Of a stretch of DNA of 64,000 nucleotides, positions 2,698-61,153 are shown piece by piece. Where the stretch lies: IMG/VR virus record IMGVR_UViG_3300032116_014939, positions 124,001 through 188,000 of that record; one strand, given 5' to 3'. How positions within the stretch are numbered: the first letter of the stretch is position 1; each line of letters begins with the position of its first letter. The translations under genes and the position numbers were made by a program. The notes below the pieces were generated by a model, which ran no database searches, was not told the origin of the DNA, and was given only the letters and a program-made list of their open reading frames with translations.

Positions 2698-2705
2698 TAT
2701 AAATA
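2698..2705 (-). promoter_or_regulatory. Putative late promoter TATTTATA
   Basis: Motif recurs just upstream of most structural genes. Confidence 0.65.
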
Positions 2706-2721
2706 TTCGTCAATAATGAAA

Positions 2722-5700
2722 TTACTCACTAATAGGAATAATACTTTGGTAAATATCAAATCCTTTTTTAATTTTACTTAACAGTTTTTGATAATTTTCG
2801 TTATTGGTTTGTATATAGTCATTAAAAATTGTTGGAGTATTAACTACTTTATTATAAGGGAAATATTCTATCCAAAATTTTGAAAATTCATTTGCAAACG
2901 TATCTTTGTTTATTATATCATTTACGTTATTATTAATGTAATCAGGGTATGCCGCAATCATAAAATCATATAAACTGTTTTCTCTTTCAAAGACTGCATA
3001 TGTTTGTGTATATTGGCTGGTGTTAGTTAAACACATGAAATTTGAAGTAATATAGTTTTTAAGTTCACCATGGTAATCGTAATCTAATGTTACTCCCGCG
3101 ATATTATTACCAAAAAACTGCAAACGATTTGTTGTTTCATTTATAGATAATCCTGATTCAATCCAACAACTAATAAAAATACAAAGTCGAACTTTATCAG
3201 TTGTAGGCAATACTTTAATTGCCGAAACAATAACATCAACACCTTCATTTTTAGTAAGCCCTGTGTATTTTGTATAATTAGAGTAAGCTTCATCTTTATT
3301 ACAATTTGGGGTATTAGACATTATTTTACCACCAATTATAGAATTAGTTATACTATTTTTTATTTGTACAGAATTGTTTGGTATACCTGTAGTAGACCCA
3401 CCTTGATTTTTAAATGTACTACCTAAATTAGTTAATAATTGTTTTTTAATTGTTTGGAAAAGTGTATCCACTTTTGGTAATGTAGCAACCGCCTGTCTTG
3501 TACCCGTAAATGATGTTGTAAAATCATCTAATCCTATACTATGGTTCACTTCAGTAATAAAATAAGACCCTGCAAATAATGGTATATTTCTTAAAACAAA
3601 ATACATTGATGGTTGAATCATTACGTTACCCATTGATTCAACAGACGCAGCGTAACTTCTAGTTTTATAAATGTTATATAAACTAACACTTTGTGTTGAT
3701 GTTTGAATTCCAGCACTTGAGTTAGCTAAATTATACTCAGCCATTAAGGATTCACTTGTTGCCTTACCTAAATCCTGACTTACATTTATTTTTTTGAAAA
3801 CTCCTTGATTTTGTAATTCAAAGTCAACCGCAAAACCAACTATTCTATTTTCTAAAGAAAAGTTTCTTTTTTGAGACGCATCAACCCCAACAGAATTTTC
3901 AGCACATATTGTAATATCTAAACCATCATCTTTATATCCATTAAGTTTGGATTTGTTATCCGTTTGTTGTGAAGGTTTATCAACAAATATATTTAACATT
4001 TTTGGTTTTGAGCTTTGATAATCAACAGTATCAAATGTTCCAAATAAATTGTTCGCAAATTCATTTGGTTCAGTATTTTTTGAAGTATCATCCTGTCCAG
4101 TTGGAGTTTGTCTTCCATAAAAATTAATGTATGATGGCATTAAAAAACTAACAAAATTATGGTCTTTTATTATTGAACCGACAACTGTAAAAACGTTTGA
4201 TTTAAGATTTGCACCTTTTAAATACGAATTAACTTTTGTAATATCAACAAATATATCACCAACATTTCTATTTGCTCTGTCAACAAATAAATAATCTTTA
4301 AATAAAGGAGCGTCAGAGTTTTCATCAATTTTTGTATAATCATTTCCAGCAATCCATTTATCATTAATTGCTTTAAACATATCATATAATTCAACTTTAC
4401 TTTGAAACCCTTCTAAAACCGAATCAATTTTTTCAGTATTTGTATTACCACCACCTAATTTTTTTTGTAAAGATGTGATAAAATTTGTGAAAGTTTCACC
4501 CGATAAATTATCAGTAATATTTAAATAAGTGTCTATTTTATTTTTAAAAACATCAATATTTCCAGAATTACCCAAAATTGATGTTGTTCCATACATTTTA
4601 ATTAAATTTCTAAATAATTTAATATTATCAACTGTAAAACCTATATTGAAAACTCTAAAGAAGTTAGTTAAATAATTTTCAGAAGCGTCGTAGTTTAATC
4701 CATCAATTGTTGAAAATCCGACATAAAGTTCCATAGTATTCCACTCGTTTGGATATAGAGCCTTTGATTCACTATAAGTTATACCAAAGTTAGTCGGCAC
4801 TGAATTTGGCGTTATCTCATAGTTTGGGATATTATATCGATTTACTATTTCAGGAGACGGATTTGATGAGAGTATATTAAACAAATTTTTATCAAACCCA
4901 GTCGGATTTCCTCGTTTAATTAAAATATCGTATTGTAACGAGTTTGTTATTGTTGTACTAACATCATAACTTTGTGAAATGGCAATACTTTTAACAATTT
5001 CGTTATAGTTAACTCCAATAATATTCTCAGATTTTTCATTATAGAATGTTATTTTTTTAAGTATTGACTCAAAAGAATAAACACTTGAACTTCCCTGATT
5101 TGCAAATTTTAAAAATTCAATTTCAAAATTATTTAATTCTTCAGTATCAAAAACAGAAAATAATTCTTCAATGTTTGAATAAATAAATTCAGAAAATAAT
5201 TCAAAACTTACTTGTTCTTGTTTATCGGAATAAACTTTTTTAAGATATTCATTATAACTAGATTTTCTAATTGGTGTTGTATTAAAATACCCATAGTTAG
5301 GTGCTCCCCAAAATAACCTTACCGAACCGTTATGAATACTTGGATTGTTTGAAAGTGAGATTATGTTATTATTATTGCCGTCAAAACATTCTTTTTTAAT
5401 TTGATTAGTTGTTGTACCAAAAGAAGGACATATTGTATAAGACTCCTCACCTTCCGAATTACTAACTTTAATTAAAACAGTCCAAGTTTTTAAATTAATG
5501 TTTGAAGATTGGATATTTGATTGGTCAGCATTAAATAAAATAATTTCTCGGTTATCAAGTGCGGTTTGTAATGCGTTTTGTATATCTAATGAAGTTGTGA
5601 CTGAGTTTGGGTTATATAAATAAGAACCATTATGTAAAAAATAAAAATCATTTACCAGTTTTGGATAAAATCCAATATGATAATTTATTGATGATGTTTG

Positions 5701-8700
5701 GGTATTTTCTAATGTAATTGATGTTGTATTAAATGTTTCTGAAGACAAAACATAAGTAGTTGATGCCAAATTGTTAATCGGGTCAAAATTATTTAAATAA
5801 TTAAAATTAGTCCAAATAGGTGTAATATAATCAGTCCCATCATTAACATAATTTTTATATCGGTTCCAAATTGAACCTAATTTCAAAATCCAAAAGTATG
5901 GTAACCTATGAACACCACCAAATTTCTTTAAACCAGCAAAAATAAAATCAGAATATGTATTTAAATTATTTTCAAATGACAAATATCTTTCTTTTAATGT
6001 TGATAAAGGTAAACTGTTTAAGAAAAGATAAGACGCTTCTAAATAGGCACTACTTTGACCATTTAAAGTTGCGTTAATACCTTTTTGTATTGCGTTAATA
6101 AAATAAGGTGTATTAAGAATTGAAGTTGTTTGTTTATTGGTTAATTCAGAGTCAATGTAATTAATAAACCCTTCTGTCGGTAAAAATTCTGTAGATTTTC
6201 TATTATTATAAAAAGTTTGTAAATCAACAGGTAGTGTTATTTCATTAGACCTCCAATTATAATCAGTATATGGTCGTAGTTTTGTTTTATTACCATTAGT
6301 ACCGACAACTGAAGAGTCTTCAAAATTTGTAACTTTTTTAAAGTATGTGTTATAATAAATTGAAAACTCTGTTGAGTTTATGTTTTTAAACTTTGTATTA
6401 TTTTGTCCCGCAGCTAAATTAGCGTAATTCCAATTTGAATCAATATATGGATATGTATCAGTAAAACTAATGTCATTATGGACATTAGAATTTAAATAAT
6501 TTACCATGTATTTTTCTTTGTCATTGGTTATTTGAATTGTTGGTAAATCTTCAAATAAAATTTTATTCGGATTTTCATTAACTTCTCTTTTTAAATAATC
6601 AGTTACAAAATACCCTTGTGAATAAATTGAATAATCCTGTTGTAAATTAACAAGTTCAGAAAAATAAGAATCTTTAGTAAAGTTCGATGTTTTAAAAAGA
6701 AAATTTAATCTTGGTGAATTTTCTCGATTACCCGAATTTAAAGCGTTAAATACATTCAGACTTTCTGTTTCAGCTAAGTAGTTTAATATATTTTGATTAG
6801 TTGAACTGTCATTATTTTTTTGAAATCCGTTATATTGTGTTATTGTTTGAATTCTTTCCCAAACTTCATATAAAAATTTACTTTCAGTTAAATTACTATA
6901 TGGCTCATTACTTGGTAACGTATCAAACCCTGAAATTAAAATTCGATTAATACCTTCATTAGTCGGTGTTGGTGGGATTGGGGGTATTTCTCTTTGTAAA
7001 TAACCTTTTAAAAACTCTTCGACAAACTCGACTTCAGGCCAAATAGTATAATTATTTCCTTTAGTTATCGATATAACTGAATTATCGCCAGGATATTGTA
7101 TTTCAAATTTCACTTGACCATCAATATTTTTTTCAACTACAAATTGAGGCCAAGGATATACAGGTGATAACTGTGATGCAGAATCATTTTTAGTTACTAA
7201 CTTTTTTATTTCACTGTTTCTAACATCAAATGCTTTTTTATGAACATCTTGCATTAATCTTAAAAAGGCCTCTGCAGATGCCATGATAACCGCAACTACA
7301 TTTCTTATTGTTGGTGAAAATCCTAATCCACTTGTTGTTTGTATAAAACTTGATAATTCTTTAGTAAGTTTATCTTCAATTAATGTTTTTTTATCATTTA
7401 ATATTTTATCTAACTCATATGTTAAATCTAAAAATCTACTTGCCCCATCAAATTGAAATAAAAATCCAACTTCACTTTCTTTAAAAATATTTTTTAAATT
7501 ATCAATCTCATTGACAATTGATGTGACTTGGTCTTGATTTACTGTTTCCACATTATTTCTTTGTTTATATGTTTCAACATAATCAATATTAGTATCATCA
7601 GTTCTTATATTTTGAATATCTATTGGGTTTTCAATTTTATATTCACCTGAACCAAAAGTTGTATTATTTTTTAAATTTTCATTATTTTGTGTAATAATTG
7701 ATTGTAATTTAGAATATTGGGAATCAATATCACTGATTGCAACTGTATCTAATTTTTGAAAATTTGATAACTTATAAGTGTAGATTTTATATCTGACATT
7801 ATTGATTGGGTTTGAAATAAAGAAATTCGTAGCATCTAAATTTAGATTAAACCACGAAGTAGTAAAATTATAAATTTCTCCACGATATTGTGTTAAATCT
7901 TGTGAGTATGTATCAATATCATTAAGCGGTGTTAGATTTGATTGACCAAATTTTGCTAAACTATAATTGATAAAATTATCCAATTTTGTTGATAACTGTT
8001 GTACCGTTAATTCGGGGAAATCTTTCGGAATTAATCCTAAGTTTTTATAATCAGTATAAACATCTCTAATCTTTTCATACCCAAGTTGAGTTATTTGTTG
8101 GGTATTAGTTTGTGTTTGATTTCCAGTATTTTCACCTTGTGACACATTAGTTCTTTTAAGATACATCTGTGGAACCGCAAAAAGTTCCGCCATTGTAATA
8201 TCGGTTAACACATTAAACTTATAACCAATCATTACCAAACTAATATCAAAATTACCTGTAGATGAATTAAATGAAGATGTAAATTTTTGTAAAATTAATG
8301 GGTATCTAACCGCCTTACCATAGTAACCTTTAAGTGTTAAATAAAATGTTGGGTATGGTAAATTAAAAAACGCAGAATATGGTGAATTTTCACCACTTTC
8401 AAATAGAGCTCTACCTTTAATATCTTCTAAATTTATTGTAATTGTTGGGATATAACTTAAACCTACTCGGTATGAAATCCCTTTTATTCCAAGAAGTTGA
8501 TTAGCAATTTGGTTTTGATTAGCAGTTGTGTCTTGTATTCCCGTCCATTCAGTAGTTAACGCACCTGTCCCTGTAGGATTTAAAAAATTCATACTTGCCA
8601 ATGAAACTGTTTTTACAGTGGTTTTGTCCGCCCCTGAAATTAGTCTACTTCTTGGTTCAAGGTCACACTCTAAATTAGCGTAATAAATTAAGTTTTCTTG

Positions 8701-8811
8701 TTTTATATTTCTATCTTCCGCATTACCATATTGGTTAGTAACCTTATTTGGGTTAATAACAAAAATGTTATCACATGTACTTGGAAAAACGTATATATTC
8801 TCACTGTCCAT
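2722..8811 (-). CDS. Baseplate hub protein (T4 gp27/P2 gpD-like) with large insertions and a possible C-terminal muralytic domain
   Basis: N-terminal GIKGISYRVG...PTITINLEDIKG; C-terminal hub signature GSYFITEVNHSIG..FTTSFTGTR; follows the gpU/gpX-like genes. Confidence 0.65.
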   Translation of the reverse strand: MDSENIYVFPSTCDNIFVINPNKVTNQYGNAEDRNIKQENLIYYANLECDLEPRSRLISGADKTTVKTVSLASMNFLNPTGTGALTTEWTGIQDTTANQNQIANQLLGIKGISYRVGLSYIPTITINLEDIKGRALFESGENSPYSAFFNLPYPTFYLTLKGYYGKAVRYPLILQKFTSSFNSSTGNFDISLVMIGYKFNVLTDITMAELFAVPQMYLKRTNVSQGENTGNQTQTNTQQITQLGYEKIRDVYTDYKNLGLIPKDFPELTVQQLSTKLDNFINYSLAKFGQSNLTPLNDIDTYSQDLTQYRGEIYNFTTSWFNLNLDATNFFISNPINNVRYKIYTYKLSNFQKLDTVAISDIDSQYSKLQSIITQNNENLKNNTTFGSGEYKIENPIDIQNIRTDDTNIDYVETYKQRNNVETVNQDQVTSIVNEIDNLKNIFKESEVGFLFQFDGASRFLDLTYELDKILNDKKTLIEDKLTKELSSFIQTTSGLGFSPTIRNVVAVIMASAEAFLRLMQDVHKKAFDVRNSEIKKLVTKNDSASQLSPVYPWPQFVVEKNIDGQVKFEIQYPGDNSVISITKGNNYTIWPEVEFVEEFLKGYLQREIPPIPPTPTNEGINRILISGFDTLPSNEPYSNLTESKFLYEVWERIQTITQYNGFQKNNDSSTNQNILNYLAETESLNVFNALNSGNRENSPRLNFLFKTSNFTKDSYFSELVNLQQDYSIYSQGYFVTDYLKREVNENPNKILFEDLPTIQITNDKEKYMVNYLNSNVHNDISFTDTYPYIDSNWNYANLAAGQNNTKFKNINSTEFSIYYNTYFKKVTNFEDSSVVGTNGNKTKLRPYTDYNWRSNEITLPVDLQTFYNNRKSTEFLPTEGFINYIDSELTNKQTTSILNTPYFINAIQKGINATLNGQSSAYLEASYLFLNSLPLSTLKERYLSFENNLNTYSDFIFAGLKKFGGVHRLPYFWILKLGSIWNRYKNYVNDGTDYITPIWTNFNYLNNFDPINNLASTTYVLSSETFNTTSITLENTQTSSINYHIGFYPKLVNDFYFLHNGSYLYNPNSVTTSLDIQNALQTALDNREIILFNADQSNIQSSNINLKTWTVLIKVSNSEGEESYTICPSFGTTTNQIKKECFDGNNNNIISLSNNPSIHNGSVRLFWGAPNYGYFNTTPIRKSSYNEYLKKVYSDKQEQVSFELFSEFIYSNIEELFSVFDTEELNNFEIEFLKFANQGSSSVYSFESILKKITFYNEKSENIIGVNYNEIVKSIAISQSYDVSTTITNSLQYDILIKRGNPTGFDKNLFNILSSNPSPEIVNRYNIPNYEITPNSVPTNFGITYSESKALYPNEWNTMELYVGFSTIDGLNYDASENYLTNFFRVFNIGFTVDNIKLFRNLIKMYGTTSILGNSGNIDVFKNKIDTYLNITDNLSGETFTNFITSLQKKLGGGNTNTEKIDSVLEGFQSKVELYDMFKAINDKWIAGNDYTKIDENSDAPLFKDYLFVDRANRNVGDIFVDITKVNSYLKGANLKSNVFTVVGSIIKDHNFVSFLMPSYINFYGRQTPTGQDDTSKNTEPNEFANNLFGTFDTVDYQSSKPKMLNIFVDKPSQQTDNKSKLNGYKDDGLDITICAENSVGVDASQKRNFSLENRIVGFAVDFELQNQGVFKKINVSQDLGKATSESLMAEYNLANSSAGIQTSTQSVSLYNIYKTRSYAASVESMGNVMIQPSMYFVLRNIPLFAGSYFITEVNHSIGLDDFTTSFTGTRQAVATLPKVDTLFQTIKKQLLTNLGSTFKNQGGSTTGIPNNSVQIKNSITNSIIGGKIMSNTPNCNKDEAYSNYTKYTGLTKNEGVDVIVSAIKVLPTTDKVRLCIFISCWIESGLSINETTNRLQFFGNNIAGVTLDYDYHGELKNYITSNFMCLTNTSQYTQTYAVFERENSLYDFMIAAYPDYINNNVNDIINKDTFANEFSKFWIEYFPYNKVVNTPTIFNDYIQTNNENYQKLLSKIKKGFDIYQSIIPISE

Positions 8812-9124
8812 AATAATAGAAATATTCTTTCACTGCTGTTTTATAATCTAACAAAGAACTCAATAAAGGGAATGGTATATTCAGCACGGCATTATCAGGA
8901 ATATTTAATTCAGAACCACTATATTGTGGATTTGACTGTAATATCAACCAACCATAAAATGGTGAGTTATAATATAACTGAGAAACTTTATCTAATCTTG
9001 ATACCCCTAACTTATAGATGTATTTCTTATCAGTAGTTTTTAATGGAATATTAACAAAAGGGATATATGTAGTTGTTCCATCAACAGTAAAATTTTGGTA
9101 TCTATTGTAATATTCGTTAGCCAT
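8801..9124 (-). CDS. LysM/P2 gpX-like baseplate protein
   Basis: YIYKLGVSRLDKVSQLYYNSPFYGWLILQSNP...LNIP pattern; canonical position before the hub. Confidence 0.7.
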   Translation of the reverse strand: MANEYYNRYQNFTVDGTTTYIPFVNIPLKTTDKKYIYKLGVSRLDKVSQLYYNSPFYGWLILQSNPQYSGSELNIPDNAVLNIPFPLLSSLLDYKTAVKEYFYYYGQ

Positions 9125-12100
9125 CAGTCAAAAATTATTTTTCCGTTAAAGGTCGTTTTATCTAAATTAACATTCACATTCGAATACAAATTTTTCAAAT
9201 TTTCGTTTTGTGTAGGAGTCGCACCTGCACTTGTATAAGAGAAATTTCTTGTTTTTCCAACAATACTTTGGTTTGACACTTGTGGATTATAATTTTTATA
9301 ACTTAAATAGTCAGGTGAATTAAAGAAAGTGTCAACCTTATTTGTTTGTGCATTTTTTTCAACTGTAAAACTTGAGACTAATCCATTAATTGTAGTTTCG
9401 ACAATACTTTTTGTTAACTGTACAGTATCTGAAACTAAATTTAAAGTTAAATTATTAATTAAACTTTGCCTTGAATTGTTATCAATTATTTCATTACAGA
9501 AAAGAGTGAAAAATCTATTTAAATTACCCGCAATATTTTGACTTGATATAGGTGTAAATGTTGTACTTGGAGTTGTCACGTCAATAATAATATCATTAGA
9601 ATTCAATAATGTATAGTATGATTGAACGTCAGAGGCTAATTTAATATAGTCAGTTCTTATTGAGGTTAGTGTATCACTTGCCCCGTCAGGTAATCCTGTA
9701 AGAGTATAAACATAAGGACTTCCAAGTGATGTGATTTTACCATCAGTCGCTGAACATATTAAATCAAGTTTTCTATAATTTTGATATATTCCAACTTGTG
9801 TATTAGAAACACTTTGTATTTGACTAGATATTTTAGAAATGATATTATTAACCTGATTTGATACTTGGGATATATAATTAGCCCTTACCGCTCTAATGTC
9901 CGATGTTGATACATTATTAACAATTAATGCTGAAATTAAAAAATCAGTTCCATTAGTAATTTCAGTACTTAGTTCATTTGCAACATTTAAAAGATAATTG
10001 TTGTAATTAACCATTTTACCAAGTATCTTAACGTTTGTAACGGGTGTATCTAAACTATTCAATGAACCTGTTACAAACTGTTTTTCAGAACTTACTTGTT
10101 TATAAACACCATAGTTTGTGGTTTGAACAATTTTTGTCACAAAACTTTCAATATTATTAAAATAGTTTTGAGTATAGACAACTGTGTTATCAAACAAACC
10201 ACCGTATAATAATGTACCCGTTTCAACACCACCTGAAGTTTGTGAATTAGTAATATTCCCAGCTTGTGTACCCCCATTATTTGTTATTTGGGTATTAAGT
10301 TGATTACTCATAGAAGGTGTTGAATTCGCAAATGCCGCATTTGCCTGACTAATATTACTTGATTGTTGATTACTTAAAATGAAAGATTCAACATTAGTAT
10401 CATCAGTTGCATCCGCTCTTTCATCGTATACTTCAGTATTTGCATAAAAATTAAAACTCAAAGCATTTTGAAGTTTTTCAATTGGTTCTTTTAGTCCGTG
10501 ACCACCAATCATTTTAAAACCAAGTTTAACATTAACAATCGCTGGTTGCACACCAATTCCTTCAGGATTAAAATCTAATTGTTCATAAGTAAACGATAAT
10601 GTATCAGGTACAATTTTACAATTATAAAAATCACCAACTCTTAAAATTAAAATTGGAGGTCTACCAAAATTAGTATTAAATGCGTCTTTGTTTTTAACAC
10701 CTCCTTGATTATCAGTTGTTGTAGGTATGGTTCTACCTGGTCTTACACATTGATTTAAAAATGTAATTCTTGAGTTAAAACCTTCAGGTGTTATAGAATG
10801 GAATAATGGATTAAAAAATTTAATTCTTTGTTTAATACCATCATATAAAAATGGGTCAGAGTTTTTTATCGTTTCAAAATAATTTTGTTCATTTAAAAGT
10901 TCTCTAATAAGTCTTTTTGTTACATTTTTTAATTTACTCTGAAAATCGGCAACAGGTACTTGTTTTAATCCAAAAGTATTATTATAACCTTCACTCACCG
11001 ATTTAGCAACTTTTGTACCAAATGGTGTATACGGTTGTACAGTAATTTTACTGATAACCAAAGTACTACAAGCAACACGGATTACATTATATTCATCGGC
11101 AATATTATTACCATTACAATTATAAGTTTGACTACTATCTTTAGGTTTGTAATTATCAATAGTTCCAGAGTTAACATCAATTTTTAATCTTCTGGAGTCA
11201 ACATACTCTGAAATATTTGTACCTTGATATACAAGTTGATTAAAATATTCAATAATACTTTGTTTTCTATCTTCACCTAAATTTTGTGATTCAGGCCCCG
11301 AAATACCACCAACACCAAAATTAGTAGCCTTTAAATCTATTTTAACCTCATTGTTATTAACTAAAGCATCCGCAATTTCTTGAGCTAATTCAATAAAATT
11401 ATTGTAATTTGGAGTTATTGTATTTTCTAAAAAACTTTTAGAAGCATCAATACCATCAAAAGATTCAGAGTTTATATTTGTGACAAGTTGGTTATATATG
11501 TTTTCATATGATTGGTCATAGTTACTATTTTCTGTAGTATCAGCATTAAAATATATTCCGTTACCAACATATGAACTTAAATTAGGTAATTCTTTTGGCC
11601 CTGAATTATCCTCTTGTGGTATTTGTGTTAGAGCGTCTACTTTATCACTTTCTGACGTATCTAAACTTTCCAATACCTGTTGATAAACTTCGTCAATAGT
11701 ACCTAAACTTAATGAACTAAATTTCTGAGCTAATTCATATATATCATACCTTTGACATCCTGCAAAAAATGAATCAACTACCGATGTTATAGTTGAGTTA
11801 GATTGATTTTGTAATTCTTTATTAACAATTAAATTTAACACGGACGGATGGTCAACAATAATTTTAAAATTTATACTACCCGACCTTTTAGTATTTTTAT
11901 AAGTATATATTGGTTCAGGTCTACCGATAAAATCAGTTTCATTAAATGATGGTGTAGAACTATCATCAAAAGTTAAATCGTATGGAGGGAACCACATAAT
12001 TCTACCACCATTAGGCCCTTTTTCTGCCGATGGAAGTTGATTATATTCAGGTGTGTCTTTCCAAGCTAAGTTTTCTAAAGACAACATGTATTTTTTTACC

Positions 12101-13902: not shown

Positions 13903-13915
13903 CTATACTTTTTTC

Positions 13916-13923
13916 TATAAATA
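13916..13923 (-). promoter_or_regulatory. Putative late promoter TATTTATA
   Basis: 13 nt upstream of ATG 13902. Confidence 0.65.
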
Positions 13924-13940
13924 GAATAGAAATAATTTTA

Positions 13941-15956: not shown

Positions 15957-15966
15957 GTTTTTTATT

Positions 15967-15974
15967 TATAAATA
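15967..15974 (-). promoter_or_regulatory. Putative late promoter TATTTATA
   Basis: 10 nt upstream of tape measure ATG. Confidence 0.65.
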
Positions 15975-15975
15975 A

Positions 15976-17485: not shown

Positions 17486-17493
17486 TATAAATA
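17486..17493 (-). promoter_or_regulatory. Putative late promoter TATTTATA (second copy at 17561-17568)
   Basis: Upstream of tail tube ATG. Confidence 0.65.
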
Positions 17494-17568
17494 GTGTCAA
17501 TTAAATATTTTTCTATTTACTTTGAACTTTTTTTCAGTCAAACTTGCTATAAGTCCAGTTTATAAATA

Positions 17569-18387: not shown

Positions 18388-18395
18388 TATAAATA
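18388..18395 (-). promoter_or_regulatory. Putative late promoter TATTTATA
   Basis: 3 nt upstream of HAD gene ATG. Confidence 0.6.
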
Positions 18396-21677: not shown

Positions 21678-21685
21678 GATAAATA
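21678..21685 (-). promoter_or_regulatory. Putative late promoter TATTTATC for the sheath gene
   Basis: Same motif, 34 nt upstream of ATG. Confidence 0.6.
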
Positions 21686-21721: not shown

Positions 21722-21729
21722 TATTTATA
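21722..21729 (+). promoter_or_regulatory. Putative late promoter TATTTATA, divergent from the sheath promoter
   Basis: Upstream of the small ORF at 21764. Confidence 0.55.
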
Positions 21730-23477: not shown

Positions 23478-23534
23478 ATTGATAAATATTTCTTTTTTGA
23501 TTATTATTATAGTTGTATAGTTAATTAAAATATT

Positions 23535-25296: not shown

Positions 25297-25304
25297 TATT
25301 TATA
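25297..25304 (+). promoter_or_regulatory. Putative late promoter TATTTATA
   Basis: 4 nt upstream of SOD ATG. Confidence 0.65.
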
Positions 25305-26814: not shown

Positions 26815-26822
26815 TATTTATA
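26815..26822 (+). promoter_or_regulatory. Putative late promoter TATTTATA
   Basis: 15 nt upstream of the neck gene ATG. Confidence 0.65.
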
Positions 26823-34125: not shown

Positions 34126-34153
34126 GATAAATAGTTAAATCCAAGTATTTATA
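34126..34153. promoter_or_regulatory. Back-to-back divergent late promoters
   Basis: TATTTATC on minus (34126-34133) and TATTTATA on plus (34146-34153) in a 47-nt intergenic gap. Confidence 0.65.
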
Positions 34154-36701: not shown

Positions 36702-36723
36702 AATTAAATACACTAAAAATTTT

Positions 36724-36749
36724 GTCCTCCTTGTGAGGACTTTTTTTTT
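36724..36749 (+). terminator. Intrinsic terminator
   Basis: GTCCTC-CTTGT-GAGGAC followed by 9 T. Confidence 0.85.
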
Positions 36750-36792
36750 GTTATAGTTGAATTATAAATGTCTTTCTATTATCTTTTAGATT

Positions 36793-48518: not shown

Positions 48519-48525
48519 TACATAT

Positions 48526-49949: not shown

Positions 49950-49972
49950 TAAAAAAATAAATTAAAATTACC

Positions 49973-50626: not shown

Positions 50627-50648
50627 AATAAATAAATTATATAAAATA

Positions 50649-52024: not shown

Positions 52025-52049
52025 AAAAAATAAAAAAAGTAAAAAAATT

Positions 52050-52874: not shown

Positions 52875-52877
52875 ATA

Positions 52878-53618: not shown

Positions 53619-54228
53619 TATTAACGGAGTTTTAAGGGATACTATTGGTAAGTTTAAAACAACCTATAATAAATTTCTAATTGAAAAAAGTGACGGGTTT
53701 GAGGAAGATGAGGTGTCGTTTAACTATGAGATAATTGAACCAATTGATAGTTTAGATTTATCCAAACATTTTTTATTTCCTTCAAAAGAAGAAATGTTTT
53801 CATTCATGTTTGAAGAATGTCCTATGGAAATATTTGGTCATTCACCATCAAGTGAAATGACAACATTTGTGGATTTCAACGACATATATGTTAAACACAG
53901 AGATAATATTCAGTTCACTATTATATCAGATGAAATTTCAAAATCAAAACCCGCAACTTTATTTTTTTTATCAAAATTTGGTTGTTTGGTTGAAAGAATT
54001 ATTTTCTATAATGAAGTAACAAAAAAAGAAGTTTTAAATGAATTTGATTTAATAGTTACTTCTAACCCTGAAATTATTATTAATTACAATAATAAAGTTG
54101 TTAAATATAAAACACTTTATAATGAAAAAATAAACTCGTCTAAAACTATTGAAAAGTTAAAGGAATTAGACGAAATAATCTCAAATATTACAGATGTTAA
54201 AAATACTAGGGGAACATTACTATATTGA
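53602..54228 (+). CDS. 5'(3')-deoxyribonucleotidase-like HAD protein
   Basis: MKIGIDINGVLRD motif I. Confidence 0.65.
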   Translation: MKIGIDINGVLRDTIGKFKTTYNKFLIEKSDGFEEDEVSFNYEIIEPIDSLDLSKHFLFPSKEEMFSFMFEECPMEIFGHSPSSEMTTFVDFNDIYVKHRDNIQFTIISDEISKSKPATLFFLSKFGCLVERIIFYNEVTKKEVLNEFDLIVTSNPEIIINYNNKVVKYKTLYNEKINSSKTIEKLKELDEIISNITDVKNTRGTLLY

Positions 54229-54457
54229 TTTGGAGTCTGCTCAATCAATTATTAATATAGACACACCAAACTCATCAGGTTCAACTGAACAACAGATAGG
54301 TGTGGTTCAATACGAAATAATTAAAATGATGCTAGAGGTAGTCTTGAGTGAAACTGAAGAAGTTGATGAAACTTTAGGAGATAAAGCATCAGCATCAATA
54401 CCATTTAAATTGGCATTTAACACTTTATTAAATAATAAAATAATTCAAAAATACTAA
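54194..54457 (+). CDS. Hypothetical protein
   Basis: Coupled ORF inside the operon. Confidence 0.7.
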   Translation: MLKILGEHYYIDLESAQSIINIDTPNSSGSTEQQIGVVQYEIIKMMLEVVLSETEEVDETLGDKASASIPFKLAFNTLLNNKIIQKY

Positions 54458-54460
54458 AAC

Positions 54461-55519
54461 ATGGAAGAAACAATTAAAAAAATTGAAGATTCAATTAAAA
54501 ATTTGAGTGAAAAAAAATCAAGAATTTATTTTTTCGCTCAAGATACTTTAGGGAACGCTAAAGCGTCAATCAAATACATTTATGATATGGCATTAACACT
54601 TAAAAATGCCGGTTATAATGTCATTATTTTACATGAAAAACCTAATTATTTTGGAGTACAAAGTTGGTTAGGAAATAAATATGATTCTATTCCCCACCAA
54701 TCAGTAGAAGGACAAAATTTACAAATAGCGCCTGAAGATTTTATGATTATTCCTGAAATTTTTGGTTACGTTATGAGTCAATTAACAAACTTACCTTGTA
54801 CTAAAATCGTATTGTCACAGTCTTATGACTATATATTTGAAACTCTTCAACCAGGACAAACTTGGCAACAATTTAACTTTACAAAGTGTATCACAACTTC
54901 AGAAGAGCAAAAAAATTATGTTTCAAAATTAATGAGAATGAGTGCTGTTGACGTTATTGAACCAGTAATCGATGAGAATTTTGTTGTTTCTGAAAAACCT
55001 GTTAAACCAATTATTTCGGTTGTGTTTAGAGAACAAAGAGATTCAATTAATTTTATCAAGTCGTTCTATCAAAAGTATCCACAATTTAGATGGATTACTT
55101 TCCGTGATTTAAGAGGTTTATCTCAAGAAGAATTTGCAAGTTCATTAAGAGAATCTATGTTGTCAGTATGGAACGATAGAATTAGTTCTTTTGGTACCTT
55201 CCCATTAGAATCTATGAAGAGTGGTGTAGCAGTTATGGGTGTAGTTCCAAAACTAATTCCAAGTTGGTTAAGCGAAGAAAACGGAATTTGGATACAAGAT
55301 GAAATAAAACTTGTAGACTATGTTGCAGATTTTGTTCAAAATTGGTTAGAAGATAATGTTTCTGAAAATCTTTACAAGAATGGTATTGAAACTTCGGAAA
55401 AATATAGTGATGTAGAAAAATTTGAAAAGACAATTTTATCAACGTTTGAAGGTTATCTTCAAGTTATAAAAGAAAATTTTGAAACTGAATTAAATAAACT
55501 ACAATTAATTGAAAATTAA
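54461..55519 (+). CDS. Glycosyltransferase, GT-B-like
   Basis: IIPEIF, VLSQ, FGTFPLESMKSG acceptor/donor loop. Confidence 0.7.
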   Translation: MEETIKKIEDSIKNLSEKKSRIYFFAQDTLGNAKASIKYIYDMALTLKNAGYNVIILHEKPNYFGVQSWLGNKYDSIPHQSVEGQNLQIAPEDFMIIPEIFGYVMSQLTNLPCTKIVLSQSYDYIFETLQPGQTWQQFNFTKCITTSEEQKNYVSKLMRMSAVDVIEPVIDENFVVSEKPVKPIISVVFREQRDSINFIKSFYQKYPQFRWITFRDLRGLSQEEFASSLRESMLSVWNDRISSFGTFPLESMKSGVAVMGVVPKLIPSWLSEENGIWIQDEIKLVDYVADFVQNWLEDNVSENLYKNGIETSEKYSDVEKFEKTILSTFEGYLQVIKENFETELNKLQLIEN

Positions 55520-55523
55520 TATT

Positions 55524-56330
55524 ATGGAAAATATTTTAGATTTAAGTGTTATATTACCTATTAAAAGTATGGTAATGAGAGATTTTGAGGATTTCTTTAA
55601 AAAATCAATTGAGTCTGTACAATCTCAAGAGTTCTTACCAAAAAACTTAATTATAGTTCATGGTAAAGATAAAAATTTATCGGATTATTTGAAAAAATAT
55701 GATTTTCAAAATCTTAAAGTAACAACTTTTGAATTTGATGGAGAACCAAATTTTTCAAATCAGGTTAATTTTGGAATTACAAAAGCTGAAACTAAATGGG
55801 TTAGTATTCTAGAAGTTGACGATGAATACTCAAAAATTTGGTTTAAAAATGTAAAAAAATATTTAGATTCATATTCTGATGTTGACGCATTTTTACCTAT
55901 CGTAGTTGAGGTAGATAATAAATTAACCTTCCAAGGATTTACAAACGAAGCTACATTTGCGGCTAATTTCTCACAAGAAATGGGATATCTAACAAATGAA
56001 ACTTTATTACAATATCAAAATTTTCAAACATCAGGAATGGTATTCAAAAAATCTCTAATTGAAGATTTTGGTGGATTTAAACCAAGCATTAAATTAACAT
56101 TTGTTTATGAATTGTTACTTCGTTTAACGTACAATTCGGCTAAAATTATGACTATTCCTAAAATTGGTTACAAACACACTAATTTAAGAGAAGGTTCTAT
56201 TTTTTGGGAATACAAAAATGGTGAAACCAAACTTGAAGAAAATGAGGTTAAGTTTTGGGTATCTTCAGCTAAAAAAGAATATTTTTTTAGTGAAGACAGA
56301 AACATAAAATTTGTTCCTGAAAATGCTTAA
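55524..56330 (+). CDS. GT2 glycosyltransferase
   Basis: LSVILP, QVNFGI, ILEVDDEY, GGFKPS, YKHTN. Confidence 0.8.
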   Translation: MENILDLSVILPIKSMVMRDFEDFFKKSIESVQSQEFLPKNLIIVHGKDKNLSDYLKKYDFQNLKVTTFEFDGEPNFSNQVNFGITKAETKWVSILEVDDEYSKIWFKNVKKYLDSYSDVDAFLPIVVEVDNKLTFQGFTNEATFAANFSQEMGYLTNETLLQYQNFQTSGMVFKKSLIEDFGGFKPSIKLTFVYELLLRLTYNSAKIMTIPKIGYKHTNLREGSIFWEYKNGETKLEENEVKFWVSSAKKEYFFSEDRNIKFVPENA

Positions 56331-57067
56331 TGATATTAAGCGCCAGCTCAATAGAAATTGCCGTTAAGACGAAAAAAAAATCTAGCGGTGAAAATTACTT
56401 TGACATAAGAGAAGAGAATGCGGTCAGAATGTTTCTGACTGCTTCTACTTTTGAAGAAAAAAATAAGATTTATAATGAATATTTAAGACATCCTTTAGAT
56501 AAAATGATTTCTTCAATTATTCGTAGATATAAATTATACAGAAAAGATATGGATTTTATTGAAATTCATACTGATACACATTCATTTTTGATGACAAAAA
56601 TTGACAAATTTAGTCCATCAAAAGAAAAGAAAGCTTATTCATATTTTGGAACTATTTGCAAGAATTATCTTATGGGTCAAATATTAAAAGACCAAAAAGA
56701 ACAAAATAGAAAAATTTCCTATGAAGATATATCAGGTGATTTAGAAAATTCTCCTGAAATGGTTTATTACTTAGATGTTGAACCATCTGAAGAAGTTAAT
56801 TTAATACCAATATTAATTGATTATATTAAAGAAACTATTGAAATTGATGATTTAAACGAAAGTGAAATAAAATTAGGTATTTCATTAGTTGAGATTATGG
56901 AAAATTATGAGACAATTTTTCCAGCAACTGATAACAATAAATTTAATAAAAATATTATTTTATTATCGCTCAGAGAGATGACAAATATGTCAACAAAAGA
57001 AATAAGAGCGTCAATGAAAAAGTTCAAAAAAATATATACTGCTCTACTCCAAGTTAATCCTGAATAA
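56330..57067 (+). CDS. Phage RNA polymerase sigma factor (T4 gp55-like late sigma candidate)
   Basis: Sigma region 2-like KIDKFSPSKEKKAYSYFGTICKNYL; NYF...E.A N-terminus. Confidence 0.7.
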   Translation: MILSASSIEIAVKTKKKSSGENYFDIREENAVRMFLTASTFEEKNKIYNEYLRHPLDKMISSIIRRYKLYRKDMDFIEIHTDTHSFLMTKIDKFSPSKEKKAYSYFGTICKNYLMGQILKDQKEQNRKISYEDISGDLENSPEMVYYLDVEPSEEVNLIPILIDYIKETIEIDDLNESEIKLGISLVEIMENYETIFPATDNNKFNKNIILLSLREMTNMSTKEIRASMKKFKKIYTALLQVNPE

Positions 57068-57083: not shown

Positions 57084-57091
57084 TATTTATA
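57084..57091 (+). promoter_or_regulatory. Putative late promoter TATTTATA
   Basis: 3 nt upstream of ATG 57095. Confidence 0.65.
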
Positions 57092-57094: not shown

Positions 57095-57457
57095 ATGACA
57101 AAACCAAAAAAGAAACAAATAAATTTTACACAGGACTCAATTTTAGCTCTGATGCAGGAAATTTATAATGAGTTAGTTGAACAACGCTCCACCGCAATTA
57201 GAATTCAAAATAAAATGATTTCTATGATGAAAGAGCCTGAAGACATGACTGTTATAGGCCCGGTTATTGAAAAACAACAAAAAATCATAAATGATTGTGT
57301 TGAGAAAAAACTTACGTTATCTAAGTTACAATCAGGTATATGGGAAAAAAGAAGTAATTCCGAAGAAACTTTTGATATTTCATCTATGGATGATGATATT
57401 CTACAGGGTCTAATTTCAAAGGATATAAATTCAGATATTGAAAAATTTAATCTGTAA
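57095..57457 (+). CDS. Hypothetical helical late protein
   Basis: ORF after the late motif, coupled to the next gene. Confidence 0.75.
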   Translation: MTKPKKKQINFTQDSILALMQEIYNELVEQRSTAIRIQNKMISMMKEPEDMTVIGPVIEKQQKIINDCVEKKLTLSKLQSGIWEKRSNSEETFDISSMDDDILQGLISKDINSDIEKFNL

Positions 57458-59380: not shown

Positions 59381-59575
59381 ATGTCAGAAAAAATAAAAGA
59401 AATATTAGTTGAATATAAAACTAAATCAAACAAAGATTTGGTATTAGCAATGGATTTTTTATCAAAAGAATTTGATAATACCAAACATTTAGTTATTGAA
59501 TTAACAAAAAAAATTGATAAAATAGAATCAACATATAACAAAATTTTAAAAGAATATGAGTCAAGGAAGGGATGA
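59381..59575 (+). CDS. Small coiled-coil protein
   Basis: Heptad pattern LSKEFDNTKHLVIELTKKIDKIESTYNKIL. Confidence 0.65.
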   Translation: MSEKIKEILVEYKTKSNKDLVLAMDFLSKEFDNTKHLVIELTKKIDKIESTYNKILKEYESRKG

Positions 59576-61145
59576 CCAACAAAAACATAGGATATTATTT
59601 GGAGGTACTGTTACCCATAATGAAGACAAATATTCATTAGAACGTATTAGAGTTAAACCTGATTTTGAAATTTACCAACAAGTAATTGATTCACTTAAAG
59701 ATATTACAAAAAATGGTAAATCAGTTTTAAATGCTCAAGGTAATGATATTTTAGAAGAATTTTTTTACGAAGATGTCGACCCTTTTGTTTATATTCCTTT
59801 AATTCCTGTTCAATTAAATATTGTTCCTGAAAATAATGATTATGTTCATTTAATTTATTATAATTGGTCTGAAAATACAGGAAGAAAAAATCAATTTTAT
59901 ATTAAAGGCCCGATATCATCAGCAATGTCTGTTGCTCGTGAAAATTCAAACCAAACAAAAAGTATTATGGCGGCAGGGCCTAATGTTAAACCAGGTTTAC
60001 CATTAAAAAATTCAAATGGATACTTTTTTGAAAACACTAAAGGGGTATTTGCTGAACCAAAAGATTATGGAATTTATTCTAAAGGAAGGTCTGATATTAT
60101 TTTAAAAGATAATGAAGTTTTATTAAGGTCAAAAAAAACACCAATATTAAAAACAAATGAATACCCTGTAACGAATCCTAAAAGGTCTTTTTTACAATTA
60201 TCTAATTTTGATTCTAAAACAACCAAAGGGACACAAAAAACAATTACTCAAAATTCAACAGTATCTGAACAAATTGTTAAACTTGTTGAGTATGAAATTT
60301 ATTATGGATTGGATACTGAAGGCCCATTTTCAGGTAACATTAACATATATAATTTACCCGGAAAGTCCCCAAATACTTTAACAGATAGATTTACACAACA
60401 AACAGTTATTGACGATGTTACATATACGTATTTTTCACATTCTTTTAATAACATTGATACTCTACAAGAAGTATCTGATATAATTAATAAAGTGATATCA
60501 GGATTAAATGACGGACTAATTAATATTGATTACTTAACGCCAAGAGAAACTGTAAATGTTACAGATGTTAGATTTCCATTTTTCTTTAGACCATCATTAT
60601 CTTTACAAAAAAAATCACTAATTGGTAGTGACCTCGAAAAGAAAAATACAAATACTTTAATTTCATTAATAGCATTTCCGAAATCACAGAAATTAACAAA
60701 CCCTGGTTCAGGATTAATTTCAAGTAAAAATAAATACGGATTAAAAAAGGTTTCAAAGAAAGTAAAATACACTCCTAATGTAAGTCAAAACGGTGATTTT
60801 GGTTACGCAGTAATGGGGTCTGAAAAAATATTTTTAATATCTAACAATTCAAATATTCCAGGATTAGAAAAAATCCAATTAAAAAATTCAGATGTTTATG
60901 GTATTAATGAACCTACTTTATCAGGAAATTATTATAATTCAACAAACTCTATGGTTAGAGGAGAATCGTTAAAAGATTTATTGGCATTAATTGTGAGATT
61001 TTTATTAAATCATCAACACCTATATCATAGAGAAACTCCATTTGAATTAACAAGGGAAACTTCTCCAATATCTAAGACAAAATTAACATCTGAATGGAAA
61101 TTATTCGATACTAAAGTATTAAATCAAAATATTCGTATAAATTGA
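59556..61145 (+). CDS. Baseplate central spike-like protein (gp5/VgrG OB-fold N-terminus)
   Basis: GTVTHNEDKYSLERIRVK...PLIP..LNIVP...YVHLIY; GRSDIILKDNEVLLRS. Confidence 0.55.
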   Translation: MSQGRDDQQKHRILFGGTVTHNEDKYSLERIRVKPDFEIYQQVIDSLKDITKNGKSVLNAQGNDILEEFFYEDVDPFVYIPLIPVQLNIVPENNDYVHLIYYNWSENTGRKNQFYIKGPISSAMSVARENSNQTKSIMAAGPNVKPGLPLKNSNGYFFENTKGVFAEPKDYGIYSKGRSDIILKDNEVLLRSKKTPILKTNEYPVTNPKRSFLQLSNFDSKTTKGTQKTITQNSTVSEQIVKLVEYEIYYGLDTEGPFSGNINIYNLPGKSPNTLTDRFTQQTVIDDVTYTYFSHSFNNIDTLQEVSDIINKVISGLNDGLINIDYLTPRETVNVTDVRFPFFFRPSLSLQKKSLIGSDLEKKNTNTLISLIAFPKSQKLTNPGSGLISSKNKYGLKKVSKKVKYTPNVSQNGDFGYAVMGSEKIFLISNNSNIPGLEKIQLKNSDVYGINEPTLSGNYYNSTNSMVRGESLKDLLALIVRFLLNHQHLYHRETPFELTRETSPISKTKLTSEWKLFDTKVLNQNIRIN

Positions 61146-61153
61146 TATTTATC
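61146..61153 (+). promoter_or_regulatory. Putative late promoter TATTTATC
   Basis: 12 nt upstream of ATG 61166. Confidence 0.6.

What the first reader, a model, noticed from the sequence alone, without database searches (positions are those of the whole stretch)
2698..61153. Late promoter TATTTAT(A/C) is the reverse complement of the T4 late promoter, with a cognate sigma candidate in the window
Seen: TATTTATA/C lies on the coding strand within about 45 nt of the start codon at 14 positions (2698, 13916, 15967, 17486, 18388, 21678, 21722, 23481, 25297, 26815, 34126, 34146, 57084, 61146), on both strands and including a back-to-back pair; an extra copy sits at 17561. It is absent before uvsX, ssb, polB, SNF2 and the sugar operon. 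Established: T4 gp55 recognises TATAAATA on the coding strand. Inference: sigma 56330 has a different -10 specificity. It is the last gene of the pre-late operon, directly followed by a late promoter.
Basis: partly seen in the sequence, partly recalled or inferred. Interest (0 to 1): 0.6.

Follow-up and report, generated by a model that had tools for sequence, protein, structure and literature searches.

The report
Late promoter box of Flavobacterium-type jumbo phage
A short DNA box, TATTTAT(A/T/C) followed three bases later by AAA, sits just before the virus-particle and lysis genes of this 242-kb phage and its relatives, next to a gene for a very divergent sigma-like protein. It is most likely this group's own version of the phage T4 late-gene switch.

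Summary
All 15 coordinates are exact matches. The window total (28) does not exceed shuffles (25), but on the coding strand within 60 nt of starts there are 12 copies against 1.1±1.0 expected. For the whole 242-kb genome the figures are 46 against 6.0±2.3.

The element extends to (A/G)TATTTAT(A/T/C, never G)-N3-AAA and has no -35 box. It is the most enriched upstream 8-mer here, in 28 related metagenomic loci, and in the cultured Flavobacterium phage immuto.

It directly precedes endolysin, large terminase, prohead protease, tail sheath and tail tube genes, and no replication or sugar gene (Fisher p 2.6e-4).

ORF 56330-57067 is a real but very divergent sigma. Its best structural match is T4 gp55 (Z 10.9), and all of the top 50 Foldseek hits are sigma factors. 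The order "sigma gene, box, next gene" persists down to 25-33% sigma identity.

Caveats:
- "Reverse complement of the T4 box" is formally true but follows from near-palindromy. The box differs from TATAAATA at two positions.
- A second, canonical sigma gene lies outside the window.
- No transcription start data exist.

Verdict: a new variant of a known kind, with moderate interest.

The parts
2698..2705 (-). Box TATTTATA-ATA-AAA, 21 nt before the ATG of a 74-aa ORF (2460-2684)
13916..13923 (-). Box TATTTATA-GAA-AAA before the 1592-aa ORF (9124-13902), which heads the array with the 107-aa and 2029-aa ORFs
15963..15974 (.). 12-bp palindrome TATTTATAAATA. Its minus-strand reading (15967-15974) is the box before the 671-aa ORF 13941-15956. 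The plus-strand copy at 15963 is a by-product of the palindrome.
17486..17493 (-). Box TATTTATA-ATA-AAA, 41 nt before the tail tube gene (16964-17452)
17561..17568 (-). Extra copy just after the stop of ORF 17569-18384. It lacks the N3-A extension (AAC-TGG), so its function is doubtful.
18388..18395 (-). Box TATTTATA-GAT-ATG, 11 nt before the ATG of a 271-aa ORF (17569-18384). A hairpin plus T-run lies directly upstream. Predicted leaderless class.
21678..21685 (-). Box TATTTATC-AAT-AAA, 42 nt before the tail sheath gene (18452-21643)
21722..21729 (+). Divergent partner box. The only plus-strand ORF behind it is a 49-aa TTG-started ORF, 21764-21913.
23481..23488 (-). Box TATTTATC-AAT-ATG, 11 nt before the in-frame ATG at 23477 of ORF 22962-23555 (probable true start)
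25297..25304 (+). Box TATTTATA-ATTA-ATG, 12 nt before the 501-aa ORF 25309-26814, directly after the stop of the SNF2 helicase gene
26815..26822 (+). Box TATTTATA-TAA-AAA before the 376-aa ORF 26838-27968 (weak match to head-tail adaptor Ad2)
34126..34153 (.). Back-to-back pair in a 47-nt divergent spacer: 34126-34133(-) before the 974-aa ORF 31195-34119, and 34146-34153(+) before the 289-aa ORF 34167-35036
56330..57067 (+). Divergent sigma-like protein, 245 aa. Residues 22-122 form a sigma domain 2, with T4 gp55 as the best structural match. Residues 152-245 form a helical domain weakly like sigma region 4.
57084..57091 (+). Box TATTTATA-AGT-ATG, 16 nt after the sigma stop codon and 11 nt before the ATG of the 120-aa ORF 57095-57457. 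Conserved at this place in all 52 related loci printed, in immuto, and after 31-33%-identical sigma homologs.
61146..61153 (+). Box TATTTATC-TAA-AAA, 20 nt before the 501-aa ORF 61166-62671
63652..63682 (+). For contrast: a host-type Bacteroidota promoter, TTTG-N19-TATATTTG, before ORF 63702-64106
36723..36787 (+). Hairpin plus T-run (36723-36749), then a near-consensus host-type promoter (TTG 36757-36759, N20, TATCTTTT 36780-36787) 5 nt before ATG 36793. This is the probable head of the array that ends with the sigma gene.

Best explanation
The window belongs to a 242-kb distant T4-like jumbo myovirus whose host is very probably a member of the Flavobacteriia (Bacteroidota).

(A/G)TATTTAT(A/T/C)-N3-AAA is its late-gene promoter. 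It is a single -10/-7-type box with no -35 element. An AT-rich block lies about 13-18 nt upstream, and the conserved A-tract marks the probable transcription start.

The host core RNA polymerase is redirected to this box by the phage's gp55-like sigma (window 56330-57067). That sigma is made from the preceding non-late array, and it then switches on the particle, packaging and lysis genes on both strands.

Where the box lies 11-12 nt before the ATG, the predicted start is the A of the ATG, or one base before it. Those late mRNAs would be leaderless or nearly so.

Shown:
- positional and strand enrichment;
- conservation across relatives;
- association with late genes;
- the sigma fold.

Inferred:
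- that transcription starts there;
- the late timing;
- which sigma reads the box;
- the leaderless class.
For: Enrichment:
- 46 copies against 6.0±2.3 in the genome and 12 against 1.1±1.0 in the window.
- It is the top upstream 8-mer.
- The extended form TATTTAT[ACT]NNNA[AT][AG] lies upstream of a gene in 52 of 63 genome copies.
- A occupies the 4th, 5th and 6th base after the 8-mer in 42, 39 and 40 of 45 sites whose ATG is at least 15 nt from the box start; for the 4th base alone, binomial p 7e-13.

Phylogenetic footprint:
- In all 52 related loci printed from the 80 fetched (sigma 65-100% identical), the spacer after the sigma gene varies in length and sequence, but TATTTAT[ATC] stays 3-6 nt before the ATG.
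- The same k-mers come top in 28 related loci pooled.
- Sigma homologs of 31-33% identity from other metagenomes are also followed by the box.

Cultured Flavobacterium phage immuto:
- 33 upstream copies against 6.1±2.2.
- The box precedes the large terminase, portal, sheath, tail completion, hub, tape measure, and tail fibre and spike genes.
- The order sigma, box, about 117-aa gene, baseplate is the same.

Gene class:
- The box directly precedes endolysin, large terminase, prohead protease, sheath, tube and an adaptor-like gene. It precedes none of 22 recognised replication, nucleotide or sugar genes (Fisher p 2.6e-4).
- Divergent pairs and 12-bp palindromes fill very short spacers between divergent genes, where transcription must start.

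Sigma candidate:
- Pfam Sigma70_r2 scores 13 bits.
- The family profile hits SigA region 2 at E 0.003 and gp55 at E 0.16.
- The model has pLDDT 89.7, and the top 50 Foldseek hits are all sigma factors.
- The best of 48,161 chains is T4 gp55, 7d7d_F, at Z 10.9, rmsd 2.5 Å over 96 residues.
- hhalign to gp55 gives E 1.3e-4 and is collinear from the N-terminus. gp55 Y97, which stacks on A-12, aligns with the family's nearly invariant Y105.

immuto has no Sigma70_r2 match at all, yet keeps the box and this sigma.

Geometry: the Flavobacterium johnsoniae -7 box spans -12 to -5, lies 4-5 nt from the start, and has AT-rich blocks at -18 and -28 (PMC6847099).
Against: - There are no transcription start or time-course data. 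The sequencing-run search found no usable RNA run.
- Box-to-ATG distances of 11-12 nt do not fit T4 geometry, where the box spans -13 to -6. They fit only if the start lies 3-4 nt after the box.
- Pfam and PHROG do not recognise the sigma at their thresholds. The gp55 match ties within 1 Z with sigma B.
- A canonical phage sigma exists outside the window.
- The box also precedes many small ORFs of unknown function (for example genome 232-242 kb), whose timing is unknown.
- The major capsid and portal genes have no exact box of their own.
- A TATTTATT copy heads an array that runs on into the ribonucleotide reductase genes.
- Gene calls come from my own simple ORF rule.
Confidence: 0.62

Rival explanations
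1. The box is a late (or middle/late) promoter, but it is read by the phage's other, canonical sigma-70-family protein (genome 51244-52044, outside the window). The gp55-like protein would then have a different promoter class or role.
For: That gene has clear regions 2 and 4 (Pfam E 4e-19 and 1e-17). It sits behind a host-type TTTG-N19-TATCTTTG promoter, so it is probably made early.
Against: - Phage immuto (complete genome) has no Sigma70_r2 match, yet has the same box before its structural genes.
- The box shows no -35 partner, which a sigma with a classical region 4 would be expected to use.
- The tight 'gp55-like sigma, then box' synteny holds down to 25-33% identity.
Confidence: 0.13
2. 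The box is read by a host sigma factor, either the housekeeping Bacteroidota sigma in a modified state or an alternative host sigma. The phage protein would act only as an accessory.
For: The box matches the host -7 consensus TAHHTTTG at 6 of 8 positions and shares its apparent geometry and upstream AT-rich block.
Against: - The two nearly invariant host positions T-7 and G-5 are changed (A at position 6; the 8th base is never G in 69 sites).
- A separate host-type class, TTTG-N17-21-TAnnTTTG, coexists in the same genome before other genes.
- In immuto the early class is sharply distinct.
Confidence: 0.1
3. The box acts in RNA rather than DNA, as an AU-rich processing site or a translation signal placed before late cistrons.
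For: It is strand-specific, lies close to start codons, and sits in a genome that lacks Shine-Dalgarno sequences (25 of 259 genes carry an SD-like 4-mer).
Against: - Distance to the ATG ranges from 11 to 48 nt, while the AAA tract keeps a fixed distance to the box, not to the ATG.
- The box heads divergent gene pairs in spacers of 15-47 nt, where no upstream transcript exists.
- It follows terminator-like hairpins more often than non-box genes do, 6 of 68 against 4 of 191.
Confidence: 0.07
4. It is a chance feature of AT-rich intergenic DNA.
For: Raw window counts equal the shuffle expectation.
Against: - The count is about 17 sd above shuffles of the upstream stretches themselves.
- The box has a strand bias, a conserved extension, and conservation across relatives whose flanks have diverged.
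Confidence: 0.01

Closest known systems
Phage T4 late transcription: gp55 with the TATAAATA box (plus gp33 and the gp45 clamp)
   Same: - An 8-bp TATA-type box with no -35 element and an A/T-rich stretch downstream.
- Tens of copies per genome, on both strands, before particle and lysis genes (PMC2988020).
- A small phage sigma whose domain 2 is the best structural match to gp55.
- Positions 1-3 and 6-8 of the box are identical to T4's, including two of the three adenines that gp55 flips into pockets, A-12 and A-8 (PMC7892883).
- The phage has T4-type capsid, portal, sheath, UvsX and gp32-like genes.
   Different: - Positions 4-5 are TT instead of AA, so the T4 A-9 is lost. The 8th base is degenerate (A/T/C). 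A fixed N3-AAA follows the box.
- The box can lie only 3-4 nt before the ATG, which T4 spacing (box at -13 to -6) does not allow.
- The sigma is 245 aa, with an extra C-terminal helical domain. No conserved hydrophobic clamp-binding tail is visible.
- No Pfam gp45 clamp domain was found.
- Sequence similarity to gp55 is marginal.
Bacteroidota housekeeping promoters (-33 TTTG / -7 TAHHTTTG)
   Same: - TA at positions 1-2 and T at positions 5 and 7.
- The apparent distance to the start and the AT-rich block about two helical turns upstream match.
- The same genome uses this host-type class before other genes.
   Different: - The nearly invariant T-7 and G-5 are replaced (A; never G).
- There is no TTTG at -33.
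- The box is tied to late genes and to a phage sigma.
Phage-encoded sigma cascades (for example Bacillus phage SPO1 gp28 and gp33/34); two-domain group 4 (ECF-type) sigma factors
   Same: A phage-made sigma replaces the host sigma on the host core enzyme to time gene classes. The architecture has two domains, sigma domain 2 plus a small C-terminal domain.
   Different: - No -35-type partner motif is seen.
- No detectable sequence kinship with those families (own knowledge for SPO1; not tested here).

Membership tests
T4-type late transcription system (gp55 / TATAAATA) | A promoter-specificity subunit with a sigma domain 2 fold | tested here: met
   AF2 model pLDDT 89.7. The top 50 Foldseek hits are sigma factors. 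VIA Z 8-11 to sigma domain 2 of many sigma factors.
T4-type late transcription system (gp55 / TATAAATA) | Specific kinship with gp55 rather than with sigma factors in general | tested here: inconclusive
   gp55 (7d7d_F) ranks first at Z 10.9 but ties within 1 Z with sigma B. hhalign gives probability 54%, E 1.3e-4, collinear. The profile hits gp55 at E 0.16, behind SigA at 0.003. A six-frame protein search of the genome with T4 gp55 finds nothing.
T4-type late transcription system (gp55 / TATAAATA) | Box sequence TATAAATA on the non-template strand | tested here: not met
   The box is TATTTAT(A/T/C). TATAAATA lies upstream of genes in only 15 of 73 copies, against 40 of 73 for TATTTATA. Many of those 15 belong to palindromes or divergent pairs.
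T4-type late transcription system (gp55 / TATAAATA) | No -35 element; A/T-rich downstream of the box; both polarities; before late genes | tested here: met
   PMC2988020
T4-type late transcription system (gp55 / TATAAATA) | Coupling to the sliding clamp (gp45) through a hydrophobic C-terminal tail, plus the gp33 co-activator | tested here: inconclusive
   No Pfam gp45-slide_C match in a genome estimated 82% complete. The C-terminus of the family is not conserved or hydrophobic. gp33 was not searched for.
Sigma-70 family (Pfam Sigma70_r2 / r4) | Region 2 above the curated cut-off | tested here: not met
   13.2 bits against a cut-off of 24. No Pfam hit in the direct scan.
Sigma-70 family (Pfam Sigma70_r2 / r4) | A region 4 helix-turn-helix domain | tested here: inconclusive
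   Residues 152-245 match sigma H and sigma E region 4 only at Z 5.0-5.4. Pfam r4 is found only in the other sigma.
Bacteroidota -33/-7 housekeeping promoter | Nearly invariant T-7 and G-5 of TAHHTTTG, and TTTG near -33 | tested here: not met
   Position 6 is always A and position 8 is never G in 69 sites. There is no upstream TTTG signal (PMC6847099).
Bacteroidota -33/-7 housekeeping promoter | 4-5 nt between the box and the transcription start | not testable with these tools
   No raw RNA reads cover this phage. The only support is indirect: the conserved A-tract at the 4th-6th base after the box.

The most novel reading that the evidence does not exclude
A very large family of two-domain, gp55-like sigma factors has kept one late-promoter code, TATTTATW-N3-AAA, across protein divergence down to about 25% identity. 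The family has over 1000 clusters at 50% identity, is unnamed in Pfam and PHROGs, and is abundant in freshwater and marine phages of Bacteroidota. That code is offset from the host -7 box at exactly the two positions the host sigma needs. It launches about a third of this phage's late mRNAs as leaderless or nearly leaderless transcripts, in a phylum that lacks Shine-Dalgarno pairing and mostly uses leadered mRNAs.
Probability: 0.35. Interest if true: 0.65.

Novelty: new variant of a known kind. Interest (0 to 1): 0.5.

Why it matters
The box gives a simple, testable rule for finding late genes and operon heads in a large, mostly uncultured group of Bacteroidota jumbo phages, where most genes have no annotation.

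It assigns a function to a protein family with thousands of members that Pfam and PHROGs leave unnamed.

It offers a natural specificity variant of the gp55/TATAAATA pair. Two of the three flipped adenines are kept and one is lost, which is useful for understanding how minimal sigma factors read single-stranded -10 DNA.

It predicts leaderless late mRNAs in a phylum whose translation initiation is unusual.

A cultured relative (phage immuto on Flavobacterium sp. LMO8) makes all of this testable at the bench.

Tried and rejected
- **Raw-count enrichment:** none.
- **Direct family and sequence searches for the sigma:** Pfam, PHROG and PDB-sequence searches gave no hit. The phage nucleotide search found nothing near.
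- **The search for related loci with alignment A1:** Repeated with the single protein.
- **RNA evidence:** the one run search gave only contig-kept runs holding 6% or less of the words, none on record as RNA. Read laying was therefore not used, since contigs cannot show starts.
- **Complex prediction (sigma with Flavobacterium beta-prime):** No result either way.
- **Other gp55 or clamp genes:** a search with T4 gp55 protein against the genome found nothing, and Pfam gp45-slide_C found nothing.
- **More distant phages with weak sigma homologs:** Microcystis phage Mel-JY01 and megaphage LR756508 show no clear box system. Mel-JY01 has TATTTATG overlapping the next start codon. They neither support nor contradict the link.
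- **Terminator hairpins upstream of boxes:** only a modest excess with a strict rule.
- **Literature:** searches found no description of this box or of late promoters in Flavobacterium phages.


Full report
**What the window is.** The window is bases 124001-188000 of a single 242,064-bp virus contig with 32% G+C. CheckV estimates the genome at 82% complete. It encodes:
- a T4-type tail sheath, tail tube and baseplate hub;
- UvsX, a gp32-like ssDNA-binding protein, a family B DNA polymerase and an SNF2-type helicase;
- an exonuclease, a dUTPase and a long run of glycosyltransferase and epimerase genes.

Outside the window it encodes a gp23-type capsid protein, a gp20-type portal, the large terminase, a prohead protease and an endolysin. 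The nearest records are only distant protein-level relatives: T4-like cyanophages, Microcystis phage Mel-JY01, a 484-kb uncultured phage, and Flavobacterium phage immuto.

Three things point to a Bacteroidota (Flavobacteriia) host:
- Only 25 of 259 genes carry a Shine-Dalgarno-like 4-mer, and A is favoured at -3.
- Ten genes sit behind the host-type promoter TTTG-N17-21-TAnnTTTG (consensus from PMC6847099).
- The only cultured relative that shares the sigma gene infects Flavobacterium.

**The observation.** The raw count is not enriched: 28 copies against 25.0±5.1 in shuffles. Position and strand are.
- Within 60 nt upstream of starts on the coding strand, the window has 12 copies against 1.1±1.0. 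The genome has 46 against 6.0±2.3 (maximum 15 in 300 shuffles of those same stretches).
- 46 of the 99 genome copies lie in 3.2% of the sequence space. The reverse complement is there 19 times.
- ATATTTAT and TATTTATA are the most enriched upstream 8-mers.

Two listed sites need a note. 21722(+) is followed only by a 49-aa TTG-started ORF. 23481(-) precedes an in-frame ATG at 23477 inside the longest ORF.

**Anatomy of the element.** I aligned 69 upstream sites.
- The core TATTTAT is preceded by A or G in 57 of 69 sites.
- The 8th base is A (40), T (23) or C (6), and never G.
- In the 45 sites whose ATG is at least 15 nt from the box start, the 4th, 5th and 6th bases after the 8-mer are A in 42, 39 and 40 cases. 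For the 4th base alone, the binomial p is 7e-13 against 42% A.
- This A-tract keeps its distance to the box, not to the ATG.
- There is no -35-like signal. Positions 13-18 nt upstream of the box are almost purely A/T.
- The extended pattern TATTTAT[ACT]NNNA[AT][AG] lies upstream of a gene in 52 of 63 genome copies. Most copies inside window genes lack the extension.
- Distances from box start to ATG cluster at 11-14 nt (24 sites, mode 12) and at 18-25 nt.
- Six 12-bp palindromes, TATTTATAAATA, occur in the genome. One is at 15963-15974 in the window, and several lie between divergent genes.
- Terminator-like hairpins precede boxes somewhat more often than they precede other genes, 6 of 68 against 4 of 191.

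**Which genes carry it.** Genes directly preceded by a box:
- endolysin;
- large terminase;
- prohead protease;
- the gene in the scaffold position just before the capsid gene;
- tail sheath and tail tube;
- an adaptor-like gene.

Genes not directly preceded by a box:
- UvsX, the ssDNA-binding protein, the polymerase and the SNF2 helicase;
- two exonucleases and the dUTPase;
- SbcC, SbcD and the large ribonucleotide reductase subunit;
- the glycosyltransferases and a methyltransferase;
- both sigma genes.

That is 7 of 13 recognised late genes against 0 of 22 others (Fisher p 2.6e-4). The late genes without a box of their own lie just behind box-headed genes. They are the capsid, portal, hub, a tail fibre, a structural protein and a wedge protein.

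Caveats: many box-headed ORFs are small and of unknown function. One TATTTATT copy heads an array that continues into the reductase genes.

**Conservation.**
- I fetched 80 IMG/VR loci through the sigma protein and printed the spacer for 52 of them (65-100% sigma identity). In all 52, the spacer between the sigma stop and the next ATG differs in length and sequence, but TATTTAT[A/T/C] stays 3-6 nt before the ATG.
- Pooled over 28 non-redundant loci, the same 8-mers come top and the A-tract persists.
- Three sigma homologs of 31-33% identity from unrelated metagenome contigs are also followed by TATTTATA or TATTTATG.
- In the complete genome of Flavobacterium phage immuto, the sigma homolog is 25% identical. 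TATTTAT[ACT] occurs 33 times upstream against 6.1±2.2 expected.
- In immuto the box precedes the large terminase, portal, sheath, tail completion, hub, tape measure, tail fibre and tail spike genes. The order sigma, GATATTTATA, about 117-aa gene, baseplate genes is the same as in the window.
- immuto's small-gene array uses a sharply different, host-like promoter, TTGC-N18-TATATTTAGGTAT.

**The sigma candidate.** ORF 56330-57067 (245 aa) has no Pfam, PHROG or PDB-sequence hit at standard thresholds. It belongs to a very large unnamed family:
- more than 8000 proteins in the word search;
- 1098 clusters at 50% identity in the exhaustive search, which I ran because the family scans left the protein open;
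- one member carries a UniRef name beginning 'RNA polymerase sigma f'.

Evidence that it is a sigma:
- Pfam Sigma70_r2 matches it weakly, at 13 bits.
- A 75-member profile hits SigA region 2 (E 0.003-0.01), then T4 gp55 (E 0.16).
- The AlphaFold model is confident, at pLDDT 89.7.
- All of the top 50 Foldseek matches are sigma factors.
- In an all-against-representatives structural search, the best of 48,161 chains is T4 gp55 in the late activation complex: Z 10.9, rmsd 2.5 Å, 96 residues. It is followed closely by sigma B and other domain 2 structures.
- hhalign against T4 gp55 is collinear from the N-terminus, at E 1.3e-4 and probability 54%.

In that alignment gp55 Y97, which stacks on the flipped A-12 (PMC7892883), falls on the family's nearly invariant Y105. 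gp55 H95, part of the shallow pocket for A-9, falls on Y103. This is only a hint, because the alignment is weak.

Residues 152-245 form a helical domain that resembles sigma region 4 only weakly, at Z about 5. No hydrophobic clamp-binding tail is evident, and no Pfam gp45 domain was found.

**A second sigma.** Outside the window (genome 51244-52044, minus strand) lies a canonical 266-aa sigma-70-family gene with clear regions 2 and 4. It sits behind a host-type promoter. It is a rival reader of the box. The gp55-like protein is favoured for three reasons:
- immuto has no Sigma70_r2 match at all, yet keeps both the box and the gp55-like gene.
- The box has no -35 partner.
- The sigma-then-box synteny is very deep.

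**Relation to the T4 box.** TATTTATA is the reverse complement of TATAAATA, but that follows from the T4 box being nearly palindromic. The two differ only at positions 4-5. Read in the same register, the T4 adenines at -12 and -8 are kept, and the one at -9 becomes T.

The box is equally close, at 6 of 8 positions, to the host -7 box TAHHTTTG. It differs from that box at exactly the nearly invariant T-7 and G-5.

The geometry fits the host box better than it fits T4. The F. johnsoniae -7 box spans -12 to -5, lies 4-5 nt from the start, and has AT-rich blocks at -18 and -28. On that geometry the conserved A-tract is the start site, and boxes 11-12 nt from the ATG would give leaderless or one-base-leader mRNAs. 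T4 spacing (box at -13 to -6; PMC2988020) would put the start inside or beyond the ATG. Several host-type promoters of this phage also end 4-5 nt before an ATG.

**What is missing.** Late timing, the start position, the leaderless class and the cognate sigma therefore remain inferences. I found no paper that describes this box or late promoters of Flavobacterium phages.

**Verdict.** The feature is real and conserved. It is best read as the late promoter of a Bacteroidota branch of T4-like phages, paired with a divergent gp55-like sigma. It is a new variant of a known kind.

Noticed in passing
outside the window: genome 51244-52044 (-), locus L001: A second, canonical sigma-70-family gene (266 aa, clear regions 2 and 4). 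The operon head, one gene upstream, has a perfect Bacteroidota-type promoter, TTTG-N19-TATCTTTG.
   Followed up: partly
window 63652-63682 (+); genome-wide list: Host-type promoters TTTG-N17-21-TAnnTTTG precede ten genes. In several the box ends only 4-5 nt before the ATG, so leaderless or near-leaderless mRNAs may also arise from host-type promoters.
   Followed up: partly
window 21764-21913 (+): A 49-aa TTG-started ORF in the 266-nt gap upstream of the sheath gene, behind the 21722 box. Its strand-helix-helix look suggests a small DNA-binding protein. Not tested.
   Followed up: no
window 57095-57457 (+): A 120-aa basic protein (N-terminus MTKPKKKQINF) always follows the sigma gene and its box. 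This holds in all 52 related loci printed. In immuto a 116-aa gene (153) holds the same place. It has no family hit, and a role in late transcription or as the first baseplate-module gene is open.
   Followed up: partly
window 2722-8811 (-) and 9124-13902 (-): Two giant ORFs (2029 and 1592 aa) with no PHROG hit, in one array behind the 13916 box. They are presumably virion or tail-fibre-like proteins.
   Followed up: no
window 15963-15974; genome 209872, 215707, 220275, 222013, 233645: The 12-bp palindrome TATTTATAAATA reads as the box on both strands. Several copies sit in spacers of 15-30 nt between divergent genes, as apparent bidirectional promoters.
   Followed up: partly
outside the window: genome about 237.9-239.9 kb (-): A repeated C-rich element (CCAATCCCCCCTACCCCCC followed by a T-run) lies just upstream of the boxes of several small tandem ORFs. 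It is not an obvious hairpin.
   Followed up: no
outside the window: genome 189654-191504 (-): The gp23-type capsid protein is 616 aa. Its Pfam match is split into two pieces about 210 residues apart, which suggests an inserted domain.
   Followed up: no
window 36793-56330 (+): An array of about 20 kb with at least eight glycosyltransferase, epimerase or sugar-related genes, plus an exonuclease and a dUTPase. It ends in the sigma gene. A similar sugar-gene cluster precedes the sigma region in immuto.
   Followed up: partly
locus L093 (immuto) 2800-18750: About 25 small immuto genes each carry an almost identical promoter, TTGC-N18-TATATTTAGGTATCAATAATTAAAAC. This is a sharply defined early class, distinct from the late box.
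   Followed up: partly
window 52104-52111 (+): An intragenic copy with the full extension (TATTTATC-TGA-AAA), 117 nt inside ORF 51987-52874. It may be an internal promoter or chance.
   Followed up: no
window 62668-63186 (+): A 172-aa ORF with a DUF6576 match (E 7e-9), in the late array behind the 61146 box.
   Followed up: no
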